Part shown: piece by piece, positions 5,931-63,929 of the stretch | Layout: the number at the start of each line of letters is the position of its first letter | Numbering within the stretch: position 1 is the stretch's first letter | Source: Scyliorhinus canicula | Taxonomy: Eukaryota | DNA length: 64,000 nt | Direction: 5' to 3' | Assembly (NCBI RefSeq): GCF_902713615.1 | Contig: NC_052151.1 | Location: 121,581,927 to 121,645,926 of the forward strand | The notes under the pieces: model-generated | What the model was told of the DNA's origin: nothing | Databases searched by the model: none | The model's input: only the letters and a program-made list of their open reading frames with translations | Program-made: the position numbers and the translations under genes

Positions 5931-6282
5931 AATTACTGAACTTGTTCTTTGCTTCTGCCCTTCCCCATCATGAGAGTCATCCAGTTCAGACTCAGAAACA
6001 TCACCCGATATTTCAATGTCATTAAATTCTTTTTCTTCCTCCTCATCTTCTTCAGTTATTCCATCAGAGACCACAAAATCTTTGTCATCTGACAAGTCAT
6101 CAAAAACATCATTGATTTTTTTCTTCTTCCTTCCTCTTCTTCGTTTAGGGGAGCATTGTTCAGACAGCGATTGATCCCAAGGTAGGTTTGGTTCACTATC
6201 ATTTGTATTGTCAGCCACATCATCTACTTTATAAGAAGGTGATTTTATTTCCTCTACTATTTCATGCAGGTAAAGTAAGGCA
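5931..6282 (-). CDS. GTF3C2: GTF3C2 exon 3 (ALLYLHEIVEEI...acidic tract...QRTSSVI)
   Basis: Acceptor ttttctttcag and donor gtgagt. Phase 2 in matches exon 2, phase 0 out. Matches [12 protein letters not shown] followed by a D-x-D-F acidic region. Confidence 0.88.
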
Positions 6283-6869
6283 CTGAAAGAAAACACAATG
6301 TAGCTTAATAGATGATCTACAAATATATTGTTAGATAATGCAGGCATGTTCAGGCCACCTCACAGAATGAAACGTAACCTGTTATCTTCCATCACATTCA
6401 GAGTGGAACTCCAACTATTGTGCTCCCACTCATGCCGCCCACCCCCACCAATTACATCATATGTACAACAGAAGCAAAAGCATGAGTTTAAAAACACAAT
6501 GTAATTTAACCTCCCTATGTATTAATCTGGGAAAAGGTCAAATATACGGAAGATTTAAGTGCTGTAGTGTCCTCCAATGCATAAAACAAGTGGTCCATGA
6601 TTGAAAGCCTACACAAGCAAAAATTAATGCTGGGCACTACAATGCATTAAGAGTTTAGCATGTTGTACTGTGAAGTAGCACAGTATGCATCTGTACTCTT
6701 TTCACATAGTGGGTTATTAATCTCAGTTACATGTTGCCATCAGAGCCAGCATCAAGCAGAAATAAAGTGTTTGCAAACAGAGTGAAACAGTCAATCACCT
6801 TGTGCACTTTCCGGAGGCATTTCTATGTACCTGTGATTGGTTCTTGACAGTGTACAACATGAATAGATC

Positions 6870-8180
6870 CAGGGTAGTGTCCTAGGTTCAACAAACTTCA
6901 GCTGCTTCATCAATGAGCTTCCTTCCATCATAAGGTCAGAAGTTGGGATGTTTGCGGATAACTGTACAATGTTCGTGGCGCCTCAGACACTGAAGCAGTT
7001 GATGTGCAAAATGCAGGCAAGACTTGCCTTATAACCAGGCTTGGGCTGACAGTGGCAAGTAACATTCAAAGAACAGTACAGTAAAGGAATAGGCTCATCG
7101 GCCCCCCAAGCTTGCGCCAATCATTTTGCCTGTCTAAACTAAAACGTTCTGCTCTTCCAGGGTCTGCATCCCTCTATTCCCATCCTATTCATGTATTTGT
7201 CAAGATGTCTCTAAACGTCGCTATGGTATCTGCTTCCACCAACTCCTCGGCAGCGAGTTCCAGGCACTCACCACCTTCTGTATAAAAAACCTTGCCTCGC
7301 ACATCTCCTCTAAATACCCCTCGCACCTTAAATCTATGTCCCCGAGTAATTAACTTTTCCACCCTGGGAAAAAGCTTCTGACTATCCACTTTGTCCCATG
7401 CCACTCATTATTTTATATCCTTCACAGAAGTGCCAGGCAATGACCATCTCCACTGAAGAGAGGATCTAACCATCGCCCCATGACATTCAATGGGATATCA
7501 TCACCGATCCTCCACTATCACATCCTGGGGTTACCATTCACCATAAACTGAACTGAGTCAGCCATATAAATACTGTGGCTACTGAGTAAGTCAGAGGCTA
7601 GGAATCCTGTGGTGAGTAACTCATCTTACCTCTTGGACCCCCCCTCCTCCCTCCTAAAAGCCTGCCTACCATCTACAGGGCACAAGAGTAATGGAATACA
7701 CGCCATTTATCTGGATCAGTGCAGCTCCAACAACACTCAAGAGGCTCAACACCATCCAGGACACAGCAACCCGCTATATTGCTACCCTTTCCACAAACAT
7801 TCAATCCCTCCACCACCAACCAACAGTGGCGGCCGTGTGTACAAGATGGACTGCAGGAACTCACCAAGGTTCCTCAGTAGCACTTCCAATCCACTACCAC
7901 CTCAAGTACAAGAGCAGCAAATACCTGGAACACCACCATACGGAGGTTTCCCTCCAAGTCACTCACCATCCTGACCTGGAAATATATCGCCTTTCCTTCA
8001 CCGTTGCCTAGTCAAAATCCTGGAACTTCCTCCCTAACAGCATTGTAGGGTGTCTACATCTCAGGGACTGCAAAGGTTCAAGAAAACAGCTCACCACCAC
8101 CTTCTCAGGGCAACTCGGGGTGGGCAATAAATGCTGGCCTAGCCAGCGATGCCCACATCCCGTAAAAATGAACAAAAAAG
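6870..8180 (+). mobile_element. CR1/L2-group LINE 3' portion with a nested antisense CR1 fragment (7068-7410)
   Basis: QGSVLG...INxLPSIIRSEVGMFADNC RT motifs; tail gggcaataaatgctggcctagccagcgatgcccacatccc. Same family at 33770-34885, 42960-44820 and 45990-46630. Confidence 0.8.
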
Positions 8181-8654
8181 GCAAACAAAGAAAACACTTA
8201 AAAGAAAAAGTAAAAGATCCCAGGGTACTAGCTGCAGAGCAGGGGATTAACAACTGTTTCCCAGCCAAGACACAATCACTGGCCATTTATCCCATTAGTT
8301 GTTTGCAGAGCCTTGCTTTGAGCACATATTAGTGACTGACTTCAAAAATAAGTGTAACGGTGGTTCCGACCAGTTTTGTTGTAATGAGCGCATGATACGA
8401 TGCTACGTAAATACAAGTTTTGCAAAATCTAACTTCTTCGGAGTGGGGCTAGAATTCGCATTGTTCTGACTCAGAGGTGAATGTTGCCATTCATGGAGTC
8501 CATGGTTTGCCATTTTCCATCCTATATGCAGCAAGTTCAATTTCTATCAGATTTCACCTGTCATAGTTCTTATCACTTTCATGTTCTGTGCAATTCCTCT
8601 GTAATTGCTGAGCTACCTCCTGATTCTATGCCCTATTCTGTTCAGTATCAAGTG

Positions 8655-9050
8655 TCTGCTTGGCTCAGTGGCAACATTCTAACTTTGAGTCGGTAGATTG
8701 TGGCTTCAAGCCCCACTTCAGGACTTGAGTCATAACCTATGTGAATAAAATGAAAATCGCTTGTCACAAGTAGGCTTCAAATGAAGTTACTGCGAAAAGC
8801 CCCGAGTCGCCACATTCCGGCACCTGTTCAGGGAGGCTGGTACGGGATTTGAACCCGCGCTGCTGTCCTTATTCTGCTTTACAAGCCAGTTGTTTAGCCC
8901 ACAGTGCGACAGTTCTGAGATATAATTGCACTGTTTCAGATGAGACATTAAACAGAGGCCCTGTGATGCAAAATATTCCATGGCACTATTCATAGTGCAG
9001 GGGAGTTCTCCATGTGCCTTGGCCAACATTTATTCACTAATTACTAAAGT
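8655..9050 (+). mobile_element. DeuSINE (SacSINE1-like) interrupted by a younger antisense SINE (8745-8910)
   Basis: tRNA-like head plus Deu-domain-like tttcagatgagacattaaacagaggccc...ccatggcactatt...gcaggggagttctcc...ggccaacatttat. A second degraded copy lies at ~9470-9670. Confidence 0.6.
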
Positions 9051-62539: not shown

Positions 62540-62922
62540 GCTTTAATAGTGGGACACTATCCTGGTTCTGGCCGGGAGGGGAAGGGGTGAGAGCAGAGGT
62601 ATGGGACATGGGTCGGACACGGTTGAGAGCCCTGTCAACCACAATGGATGGGAAACCGCGATTAAGGAAGAATGAAGACATGTCAGCAGCACGGATTTGT
62701 AAAGTGGCATCATCAGAACAGATCAGACACAAAGGAACTGGGAGAATGGTATAAGTGGGGTGTAATGAGCTGTTGTCAAGCTAGCTTTAGGAGTTGGTGG
62801 GCTTGTAATGGATACTAGTGGACAGTATATCCCCAGAAATTGAAATAGAAAGGTCAAGGAAGGGGTGGGAAGTGTCGAAGATGGACCATGTGAAGGTGAT
62901 AGAGGGGTGGAAATTGGAAGCA
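62540..62922 (-). mobile_element. Penelope-like element RT thumb/linker fragment
   Basis: LSTSIHYKPTNS, IPFSQFL, ICSDDATL...FFLNRGFP...ALNRVR motifs. Confidence 0.8.
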
Positions 62923-63207
62923 AATATTTAAAATTTAGTGTGTCCAATTCATTTTTTCCAATTAAGGGACAATTTAGTGTGGCCAATCTACCTACCCTGC
63001 ACATCTTTGGGGGCAAAACTAGGAGCCAATGCGGGTACCCTTAGCCACACCTCTTGTTTGGAGGAAAGGAGACATGTTAAAGGAGAAATTCTATGTACTA
63101 TACAGAGAAGAAAAAACTCAAACATCAAGCTATCTGGATGGGGAAATAAGGCTCCTGCCAAAGTATTTTCACATATGTTTTACTGCATAACGTTGGTGCA
63201 AGTCTTT

Positions 63208-63289
63208 ACTAAACTACGTGACCCCAGCAGCCTTAATTGGAGTGATTCACTAAACTACGTGACCCCAGCAGCCTTAATTGGAGTGATTC
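63208..63289. repeat. Perfect 41-bp tandem duplication
   Basis: actaaactacgtgaccccagcagccttaattggagtgattc x2. Confidence 0.95.
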
Positions 63290-63734
63290 TTTTATTCATA
63301 GAACACCTACAGTGATATTCGCCCTCTGATCCTTCGCCAGTTACCTATTACCATTCATTGTCTAGGTTCACACGTAGTAAATAGCCAAATACCAATGGGT
63401 CAAGTATCACTAAATCCTGGCATGTGTAGATCCATTTCCCTTTGAAAGAGACACCACTTTCAGAAGAGGATGAAGAAAAAAAGCAAACTTACTTCCTCTT
63501 CACTTCAGTACATTGAACATGAAATTATTTTCAAACAATGCCATAATAAACTTTTGAAATTTCAAAAAAAAAAACAGTAGTGGGAATTGGACGTGCAGGT
63601 TTAAAATCCTCATGTTCTTTATAAATATTCTGAGACTCATTAAAAGTGACAGTAGAAATTGAGGAAATTGTCGATCCTGTAACAATCGATCAAACCTATC
63701 TGGATAAATAACAAGTCCCAAGCCTTTTCCGCAC

Positions 63735-63929
63735 CTTGTCATCATCAGGCACCAGGTCCCGTTGGATTTTCCTTCGAGGCCACTCTCGAGTAAGTTCATC
63801 TGCTACTATCTCATGCAGGTGGTAAGCAGCCAGCTTGGCAGAGCTCCTCCGCACTCTTCCACTGGACGTTCTCTCCACTTCAGGTTCACTTTCTTTTTCA
63901 GCAGCTTCGTCATCTGTAGTTTCCGGTGA
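63735..63929 (-). CDS. ZNF512: ZNF512 internal coding exon (SPETTDDEAAEKESEPEVERTSSGRVRRSSAKLAAYHLHEIVADELTREWPRRKIQRDLVPDDDK)
   Basis: 195 nt, phase 0/0, acceptor ...ttgactag and donor gtgcgg. Resembles human ZNF512 [42 protein letters not shown] (recalled). Upstream exons lie beyond the window. Confidence 0.9.

What the first reader, a model, noticed from the sequence alone, without database searches (positions are those of the whole stretch)
6250..63880. Adjacent ZNF512 and GTF3C2 share a gap-free 24-aa basic/helical motif ending in LHEIV
Seen: ZNF512 ERTSSGRVRRSSAKLAAYHLHEIV (~63804-63875) aligns without gaps to spliced GTF3C2 EVTASGRPKRRAARAALLYLHEIV (exon 2/3 junction), 13/24 identical. 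The DNA at 63803-63820 and 6254-6271 matches at 17/18 nt. The genes are same-strand neighbours. From memory (unverified), human GTF3C2 ([19 protein letters not shown]) and human ZNF512 ([20 protein letters not shown]) both read LQELA at this position, so the motif may change in concert within each lineage. Inference: either a shared docking helix for a common partner linking ZNF512 proteins to TFIIIC, or a relic of a common ancestral gene (tandem duplication or fission of a zinc-finger/WD40 protein). I know of no description of this.
Basis: partly seen in the sequence, partly recalled or inferred. Interest (0 to 1): 0.8.

Follow-up and report, generated by a model that had tools for sequence, protein, structure and literature searches.

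The report
Shared ZNF512 / TFIIIC110 helix motif
Two neighbouring shark genes, the heterochromatin zinc-finger gene ZNF512 and the RNA polymerase III factor gene GTF3C2, carry the same undescribed module of about 35 residues (a basic turn plus a helix). Both families have kept it in every jawed vertebrate sampled, so it is an ancient shared part whose function can now be tested.

Summary
Both peptides, the 13/24 identity and the 17/18 nt match are at the given coordinates on the minus strand. RNA reads confirm the GTF3C2 splice (6282 to 12058) that joins the two motif halves.

The motif is conserved in all 119 GTF3C2 and 119 ZNF512 orthologues examined, and in ZNF512B. The invariant positions coincide: G-R-x-x-R-x-x-A-x-x-A-x-x-x-L. 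Profile against profile gives E = 1.9e-12, with a score of 59.6 against at most 19.9 in 200 column shuffles. A ZNF512-only profile finds human GTF3C2 as its only hit in the PDB sequence set. No Pfam family or paper describes the motif.

ZNF512 lies directly upstream of GTF3C2 on the same strand in catshark, chimaera and gar. Milkfish has a fused gene model. Frog and bird have other neighbours.

Best reading: a short module was copied between tandem neighbours before ZNF512 and ZNF512B split, and has been kept by selection since. The function is only inferred: a basic nucleic-acid or chromatin contact plus a docking helix.

Three details need correcting. The ZNF512 copy is mid-protein, not N-terminal. 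"Concerted change" is weak (clade permutation P about 0.05, several discordant lineages). The 17/18 nt match needs no gene conversion.

The parts
63729..63929 (-). ZNF512 exon carrying the whole motif. It corresponds to residues 373-439 of S. canicula ZNF512 and ends ...DLVPDDDK before a GT donor.
   Evidence: Stop-free frame. tblastn with P0231 gives 97% identity. 109 family hits in the representative search.
63804..63875 (-). ZNF512 copy of the shared motif, ERTSSGRVRRSSAKLAAYHLHEIV.
   Evidence: Invariant in 15/15 cartilaginous-fish ZNF512 proteins.
42292..60768 (-). Remaining ZNF512 coding exons in the window: 60768-60664, 51119-51057, 45638-45540 (C2H2 finger) and 42600-42292 (last coding exon).
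   Evidence: tblastn with P0231, 97-100% identity. Finger pattern found.
12058..13442 (-). GTF3C2 large first coding exon. It encodes the N-terminal disordered arm with AT-hook-like KKRGRKPK units and ends with the first half of the motif.
   Evidence: tblastn with P0167, 94% identity. Stop-free 526-codon frame. Splice donor position from RNA reads.
12289..12666 (-). Tandem array with a 144-nt (48-codon) unit, 2.6 copies, inside the GTF3C2 exon. Each unit carries one AT-hook-like KKR[GA]RKPK.
12058..12101 (-). GTF3C2 motif, first half: EVTASGRPKRRAAR plus 2 nt of the split Ala codon.
6283..12057 (-). Phase-2 intron (5775 nt) that interrupts the GTF3C2 motif. It is rich in SINE copies.
   Evidence: Joint 6282 to 12058 in RNA reads and one contig. 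The same intron position occurs in chimaera, gar and Xenopus.
6255..6282 (-). GTF3C2 motif, second half: last nt of the split Ala codon plus ALLYLHEIV.
5931..6282 (-). GTF3C2 next exon: the motif helix followed by an acidic/Ser-rich linker and a KRRRGRKKKK patch. The 3' end is approximate.
   Evidence: tblastn with P0167, 96% identity. Translation.
958..1059 (-). GTF3C2 following exon. The expected reading (..SYGTKRRLVGNFANGLPN.IMVPVWEATTITRK) is spread over three frames in this assembly.
   Evidence: Also noted earlier as s1-200332.

Best explanation
The two motifs are copies of one module of about 35-40 residues. It consists of a short turn (E-x-T-x-S-G-R), two invariant arginines (G-R-x-x-R), and an amphipathic helix with a small-residue face (A-x-x-A-x-x-x-L-x-E-[IL]-[AV]-x-x-E-[LIM]).

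In ZNF512 and ZNF512B the module sits in the linker just before the last C2HC+C2H2 finger pair. In GTF3C2 (TFIIIC110) it sits in the disordered N-terminal arm, after the AT-hook-like units and ahead of the WD40 propeller.

Shown here: the two families match in register at their invariant positions; the similarity is highly significant and specific; and ZNF512 then GTF3C2 is an ancestral tandem, same-strand gene pair in jawed vertebrates.

Inferred: a stretch of roughly 110 nt was copied from one neighbour into the other. Because ZNF512B also carries the module, either the copy was made before ZNF512 and ZNF512B split (by my own inference, the early-vertebrate genome duplications), or ZNF512 was the donor. 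The direction is unknown. Purifying selection has held the module in both families ever since.

Inferred, with less certainty: the module works the same way in both proteins. The arginines would contact a nucleic-acid backbone or an acidic chromatin surface, and the Ala/Leu face of the helix would dock on a protein surface. That would give two repeat-DNA-binding factors the same accessory tether.
For: Profile-profile comparison of 26 GTF3C2 against 23 ZNF512/ZNF512B segments gives Prob 97.7%, E = 1.9e-12 over 40 columns. The score is 59.6 against 9.4 +/- 2.4 (maximum 19.9) for 200 column shuffles, and 15.3 for the reversed alignment.

Every cross-lineage subset remains significant, with E from 9e-6 to 9e-11.

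A gap-free 49-sequence alignment has R14, A17, A20 and L24 invariant, and G10 and R11 in at least 90% of sequences, across both families.

A profile built from ZNF512 and ZNF512B sequences alone finds human GTF3C2 as the only hit among 177,635 PDB sequences, E = 1.3e-4. The joint profile finds it at 8.8e-13, and the next hit is at E = 0.85.

phmmer with the shark exon matched two stretches in the fused milkfish model P0006. The joint profile places them at the ZNF512 motif (362-393, 58.7 bits) and the GTF3C2 motif (764-793, 54.4 bits).

The motif is present in all 119 GTF3C2 and 119 ZNF512 orthologues listed, from chimaera to mammals, and in ZNF512B.

Tandem adjacency is seen in the catshark window, Callorhinchus and gar. 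The two genes lie on contigs of equal length in many further species, consistent with one chromosome.

AlphaFold2 predicts the same local shape in both families: a bridged turn around SGR followed by a helix, with pLDDT 87-89 in the helix.
Against: The shared part is short and has a basic plus amphipathic composition, so convergence cannot be excluded formally.

GTF3C2 has a conserved phase-2 intron inside the motif and ZNF512 has none. A DNA-level copy therefore needs an intron gain, an intron loss, or a spliced intermediate.

No outgroup (cyclostome or invertebrate) could be examined, so the age and direction of the copy are open.

The specificity test covered only PDB sequences, not a whole proteome.

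Nothing tested here shows what the module binds.
Confidence: 0.68

Rival explanations
1. Independent (convergent) origin. Two chromatin proteins each evolved a basic patch followed by an Ala-rich amphipathic helix, and their adjacency is a coincidence.
For: The motif is short and the flanks are unrelated. The intron structure differs between the two genes. A generic helix of the dsRBD alpha-2 type (QRHAAQNALEYL in Loquacious) is the next-best PDB match, at E = 0.85.
Against: The match is order-specific and about 21 SD above column shuffles. Six conserved positions, four of them invariant, coincide without gaps. The predicted turn before the helix is also shared. The two genes are direct neighbours in three early-branching lineages, which is very unlikely for two unrelated carriers.
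Confidence: 0.12
2. Ongoing gene conversion between the neighbours keeps the two copies alike within each lineage. This would explain LHEIV in both shark genes and the 17/18 nt match.
For: The 5-mer LHEIV and the codons CTG CAT ... ATA GTA are identical in the window. Cartilaginous fishes share EIV in both genes and amniotes share ELA in both. The clade permutation gives P = 0.05-0.06.
Against: The Glu codon inside the 18-mer is GAG in ZNF512 (catshark, Heptranchias) but GAA in GTF3C2 (catshark, Callorhinchus, Xenopus). That difference is old and has not been erased. Nucleotide identity across the motif is only 44/80. The codon match has a chance probability of about 0.09 given the same residues. 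Amniotes share ELA although adjacency is lost in bird and frog. Many lineages are discordant. The within-lineage profile score is no higher than cross-lineage scores.
Confidence: 0.05
3. The two copies co-evolve because they bind one common partner, so parallel substitutions (I/L, A/V) track changes in that partner.
For: Parallel states occur in cartilaginous fishes and in amniotes. The invariant positions are the same in both families.
Against: At most two independent parallel events are seen. The H/Q position does not co-vary (sauropsids have H in ZNF512 and Q in GTF3C2). Salamanders and ray-finned fishes are discordant. No common interactor is known.
Confidence: 0.15
4. The conserved part is mainly a classical nuclear localisation signal (PKRR / RRS.K), and the helix is incidental.
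For: A basic cluster is invariant. Both proteins are nuclear. Importins KPNA3/4 are reported with ZNF512B (PMC11602157).
Against: The invariant Ala, Ala and Leu and the 18-30-residue predicted helix are not features of an NLS. The predicted NLS of ZNF512B is placed by its authors in the internal region between finger pairs 1 and 2, which is a different place. GTF3C2 has several other, stronger basic clusters nearby.
Confidence: 0.07

Closest known systems
AT-hook (HMGA-type minor-groove DNA-binding motif, core R-G-R-P)
   Same: GTF3C2 reads [SG]-G-R-P-[KQR]-R-R, with G, R and P conserved in at least 90% of orthologues. It follows canonical-looking KKRGRKPK units in the same arm.
   Different: ZNF512 and ZNF512B have G-R-V, not G-R-P. 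The first Arg of the core is missing. The invariant helix that follows is not part of an AT-hook. The Pfam scans returned no AT-hook match.
Helix alpha-2 of the double-stranded-RNA-binding domain (KK.AK..AA..AL..L)
   Same: Basic residues at the helix start are followed by an AA..AL..L face. It is the only non-family PDB match (Loquacious).
   Different: E = 0.85, so the match is not significant. The rest of the dsRBD fold is absent.
HMGN nucleosome-binding core (RRSARLSA) and LANA-type arginine-anchor hairpins. Both are recalled from memory.
   Same: Amniote ZNF512 reads RRSAKVA. An S-G-R turn precedes the arginines, and both carriers are chromatin proteins.
   Different: The motif profiles hit no HMGN, LANA or CENP-C chain in the PDB set, and no HMG14_17 Pfam match was returned. 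This is a lead only.
ZNF512B internal NuRD-interaction motif (RK.xxP.K/R, residues 419-430; PMC11602157)
   Same: It is another short conserved docking motif in the same protein family.
   Different: It has a different sequence and lies in a different place (the internal region between finger pairs 1 and 2). It is not shared with GTF3C2.

Membership tests
GTF3C2 / TFIIIC110 orthologue (window gene at 13442 and below) | Sequence orthology to named GTF3C2 proteins, with the N-terminal arm upstream of a WD40 propeller | tested here: met
   tblastn with S. torazame GTF3C2 gives 94-96% identity over residues 1-579. The spliced motif hits only human GTF3C2 in the PDB. The WD40 part lies outside the window.
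ZNF512 orthologue (window gene at 63929-42292) | ZNF512-type C2HC plus C2H2 finger pairs (Pfam PF21276, PF21367) and orthology to named ZNF512 | tested here: met
   97-100% identity to S. canicula ZNF512 residues 373-627. Full-length relatives carry PF21276 and PF21367.
AT-hook | Invariant G-R-P core flanked by basic residues | tested here: not met
   Met in GTF3C2 only (GRP in at least 90%). ZNF512 and ZNF512B have GRV or GRI. No Pfam match was returned.
AT-hook | Binding to the minor groove of AT-rich DNA | not testable with these tools
   Needs EMSA or NMR with the peptide.
C2H2 zinc finger (as a degenerate, zinc-less relic of a ZNF512 finger) | Profile similarity to ZNF512 C2H2 fingers, and the Cys/His ligands | tested here: not met
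   hhalign of the motif alignments against 57 ZNF512 fingers scores 10, compared with 7.2 +/- 1.9 for shuffles. No Cys ligands are present.
HMGN nucleosome-binding domain | Match to the HMG14_17 profile or to the RRSARLSA core | tested here: not met
   No Pfam hit at E up to 10. No HMGN chain was hit in the PDB profile searches.
Any curated Pfam family covering the motif | A Pfam-A match over the 65-residue segments | tested here: not met
   Six segments from both families gave only chance-level hits (FA at E = 0.03, Tas3-like_N at E = 0.18), far below the cut-offs.

The most novel reading that the evidence does not exclude
The module is a common-partner or common-surface docking element, for example on the nucleosome or on a chromatin enzyme. 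TFIIIC110 and the SUV39H-recruiting ZNF512/ZNF512B proteins would then compete or cooperate at the same site. That would mechanistically tie Pol III/TFIIIC sites (tRNA genes, SINEs, boundary elements) to the initiation of constitutive heterochromatin.
Probability: 0.15. Interest if true: 0.8.

Novelty: new member of a known kind. Interest (0 to 1): 0.55.

Why it matters
The N-terminal arm of TFIIIC110 is not discussed in the paper on the human TFIIIC cryo-EM structures and has no assigned function. The linker of ZNF512/ZNF512B that holds the motif lies outside the regions mapped so far: the NuRD motif, the spindle-binding region and the fingers.

A module kept almost unchanged in both families from chimaera to mammals marks a functional element that neither field has looked at. 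It gives a small, precise target of four invariant residues for mutagenesis, pull-downs and motif-swap experiments.

It is also a clean example of a protein fragment shared between tandem neighbours whose linkage dates to the jawed-vertebrate ancestor.

Tried and rejected
1. Complex prediction of the GTF3C2 segment with the ZNF512 segment gave no verdict, with scores under the mark. It is not evidence for or against binding.

2. Degenerate zinc finger idea: no profile similarity to ZNF512 C2H2 fingers. Rejected.

3. A second, internal copy of the motif in GTF3C2 (AT-hook plus helix repeats): the joint HMM finds a single copy per protein, with no second hit above 3 bits. Rejected.

4. Pfam scans of the exons and of 65-residue segments gave nothing meaningful. 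ESM Atlas feature searches of both motif parts gave no usable hit.

5. Single-exon PDB searches missed human GTF3C2. Only the spliced motif found it.

6. Literature: ZNF512 and GTF3C2 co-occur only in GWAS or gene lists for the GCKR region. ZNF512 with TFIIIC gave one irrelevant paper. Sfc6 with AT-hook gave nothing. Ma et al. 2024 (Nature) is not held.

7. A proteome-wide search with the motif HMM, and a search for cyclostome or invertebrate orthologues, could not be done. The large searches list only the best 109-120 hits, and these are filled by the two families. Candidates are also length-limited.

8. DNA of both genes from one further cartilaginous fish could not be paired. The Heptranchias GTF3C2 gene is too long to be served, and several isoforms are not on record.
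Full report
WHAT IS IN THE WINDOW. Both genes lie on the minus strand. The stop-free stretch 63929-63699 encodes ...EPEVERTSSGRVRRSSAKLAAYHLHEIVADELTREWPRRKIQRDLVPDDDK. tblastn with Scyliorhinus canicula ZNF512 (P0231) maps residues 373-627 onto five exons: 63929-63729, 60768-60664, 51119-51057, 45638-45540 and 42600-42292, at 97-100% identity. The window therefore holds only the C-terminal 40% of ZNF512, and the motif is mid-protein.

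S. torazame GTF3C2 (P0167) maps to 13442-12042 (94% identity), 6284-5931 (96%) and, poorly, 1059-958. The distance from the ZNF512 stop codon to the GTF3C2 start codon is about 29 kb.

The GTF3C2 motif is split. EVTASGRPKRRAAR(A) ends the large exon at 12058 and ALLYLHEIV starts the next exon at 6282. Laying RNA reads on 6160-12159 gave the joint 6282 to 12058 (skips 5775 nt; CT..AC on the plus strand, which is GT..AG on the minus strand). It is seen in two reads of one run, one read of another run, and one contig of a third. The 13/24 identity and the 17/18 nt match are confirmed.

IS IT MORE THAN CHANCE? For the window's own two sequences, the local alignment score is 68 against shuffle means of 33-34 (SD 5), giving P of about 1e-4. 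The decisive evidence comes from relatives.

phmmer with the ZNF512 exon against 1.84 billion representatives gave 109 hits. Those checked by Pfam scan or source name, and every recovered motif segment, are ZNF512 or ZNF512B. All carry the block ERTPSGRV.R.SA.VA.[FY]HL.E[IL]A..EL.K.WPKRK...DLVPDD.K.

One hit, P0006, is a 1519-residue RefSeq model from Chanos chanos that fuses ZNF512 with GTF3C2. HMMER matched two stretches in it. The joint profile places them at the ZNF512 motif (362-393) and the GTF3C2 motif (764-793).

Using P0006 and P0003 as handles I retrieved 119 named GTF3C2 and 119 named ZNF512 orthologues, from chimaera to mammals. Every one has the motif.

In a gap-free joint alignment of 49 sequences, R14, A17, A20 and L24 are invariant and G10 and R11 are at least 90% conserved across both families. 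The pattern is G-R-x-x-R-x-x-A-x-x-A-x-x-x-L.

hhalign of the GTF3C2 alignment against the ZNF512/ZNF512B alignment gives Prob 97.7%, E = 1.9e-12 over 40 columns. With the columns of one alignment shuffled 200 times the score is 9.4 +/- 2.4 (maximum 19.9) against 59.6 observed, and the reversed alignment scores 15.3. All twelve lineage-subset comparisons, for example tetrapod GTF3C2 against ZNF512B, stay at E between 9e-6 and 9e-11.

A profile built from ZNF512 and ZNF512B alone finds human GTF3C2 (8cli_C, residues 179-215) as its only hit among 177,635 PDB sequences, E = 1.3e-4. The joint profile finds it at 8.8e-13, and the next hit is a dsRBD helix at E = 0.85. The motif is therefore real, specific within that sequence set, and not a generic basic helix. 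No whole proteome could be searched.

ANATOMY. AlphaFold2 on the two 65-residue alignments predicts the same local shape. There is a bridged turn around E-x-T-x-S-G-R, then a helix starting at the second arginine. The helix has 18 residues in GTF3C2 and 30 in ZNF512, with pLDDT 87-89 in the helix.

The conserved hydrophobic positions follow a 3-4 spacing (A17, A20/21, L24, I/L27-A/V28, L31-32), with alanines in the first two turns. This is a docking face that allows very close approach.

In ZNF512 the module directly precedes the last C2HC finger. In GTF3C2 it follows AT-hook-like KKRGRKPK units, and acidic linker separates it from the propeller. No Pfam family covers it.

GENE ORDER AND AGE. 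ZNF512 ends about 9.6 kb upstream of GTF3C2 on the same strand in Callorhinchus milii and in Lepisosteus oculatus. The catshark window shows the same order, and the milkfish model is fused.

In Xenopus laevis the upstream neighbour is a PIG-X gene. In the bird Colius it is an EB1-family gene. The pair is therefore ancestral for jawed vertebrates and was broken in tetrapods, although the two genes still lie on contigs of equal length in salamanders and geckos, consistent with one chromosome.

Because ZNF512B also has the module, the ZNF512 copy predates the ZNF512/ZNF512B split. ZNF512B is described as vertebrate-specific (PMC13458389).

The phase-2 intron inside the GTF3C2 motif is at the same codon in catshark, chimaera, gar and frog. 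The ZNF512 copy is uninterrupted.

CONCERTED CHANGE AND GENE CONVERSION. By clade, the L-x-E-[IL]-[AV] part reads as follows, with ZNF512 first and GTF3C2 second.
- Cartilaginous fishes: LHEIV / L[HQR]EIV.
- Sturgeon: LQEIA / LQSFA.
- Basal teleosts: L[QR]EIA / LH[ST]L[AV].
- Salamanders: LHEIA / LQELA.
- Squamates, turtles and birds: LHELA / LQELA.
- Mammals: LQELA / LQELA.

The parallel is limited to V in cartilaginous fishes and L in amniotes. A permutation over eight clades gives P = 0.059 for all 28 columns and 0.049 for the C-terminal half. The clades are not independent, so the evidence is weak.

At the DNA level, the Glu codon inside the 18-mer is GAG in ZNF512 (catshark, Heptranchias) and GAA in GTF3C2 (catshark, Callorhinchus, Xenopus). 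That difference is old and has not been erased. The wider aligned motif region (about 27 codons) is 44/80 identical at the nucleotide level. At least 4 of 5 identical codons, given identical residues, has P of about 0.09 with local codon usage. Gene conversion is not needed to explain the match.

WHAT IT MOST LIKELY IS. The best reading is a short module copied between tandem neighbours and then held by selection in both (confidence about 0.68).

The function is inferred only. The invariant arginines at the helix start suit contact with a phosphate backbone or an acidic chromatin surface. In GTF3C2 the G-R-P resembles an AT-hook core. The Ala/Leu face suits docking on a protein.

Both carriers bind dispersed or repeated DNA through other domains. 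TFIIIC recognises the B-box of tRNA genes (PMC11811891) and also binds Alu elements (PMC7014570). ZNF512 and ZNF512B bind pericentric satellites and LINEs and recruit SUV39H (as summarised in PMC13537249). A shared accessory tether is therefore plausible.

No paper describes the motif or links ZNF512 to TFIIIC. The human TFIIIC structure paper does not discuss the N-terminal arm of TFIIIC110.

LIMITS. No cyclostome or invertebrate sequences could be examined, so the donor gene is unknown. Specificity was tested on PDB sequences only. The complex prediction gave no verdict. Human ZNF512 itself was not retrieved; placental orthologues stand in for it.

Noticed in passing
window 958-1059 (-): The GTF3C2 exon after the motif exon is spread over three reading frames relative to other sharks (expected ..SYGTKRRLVGNFANGLPN.IMVPVWEATTITRK). 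This is either small assembly indels or a damaged allele. I had no RNA reads left to decide.
   Followed up: partly
window 12289-12666 (-): A 144-nt tandem array (2.6 copies) inside the GTF3C2 coding exon multiplies an AT-hook-like unit (KKR[GA]RKPK). Chondrichthyan GTF3C2 proteins have 1231-1367 residues, against about 840-1000 in most teleosts and amniotes. Salamanders are also long, at 1211-1512 residues.
   Followed up: partly
P0006 (Chanos chanos RefSeq protein, 1519 aa): This protein is annotated as GTF3C2 but is a fusion of ZNF512 (residues 1 to about 520) and GTF3C2 (from about 640). It is probably a read-through or merged gene model of the tandem pair.
   Followed up: partly
L005 27483-30772 (Colius striatus): The gene downstream of bird GTF3C2 encodes a PRK plus UPRTase protein that looks like UCKL1. 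From memory, UCKL1 is the neighbour of ZNF512B in human. That would fit an ancestral ZNF512-GTF3C2-UCKL block duplicated in early vertebrates.
   Followed up: no
P0243 (1012 aa, MetaClust): This protein carries the ZNF512 motif twice, at 550-580 and 705-735, with identical sequence. It is either a tandem exon duplication or an assembly artefact.
   Followed up: no
window 8760-8960, 10160-10560, 10960-11160 and many other places: Dense copies of tRNA-derived SINE-like repeats fill the GTF3C2 intron and the intergenic region. They dominate RNA read depth there and give many spurious joints, including opposite-strand joints such as 8780/10428.
   Followed up: no
C-terminus of chondrichthyan ZNF512 (for example P0231 residues 610-618): A faint second echo of the basic half of the motif (RLKRPSAKA) appears at the C-terminal end of ZNF512. 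It scores at or below 3.6 bits and is not significant.
   Followed up: partly
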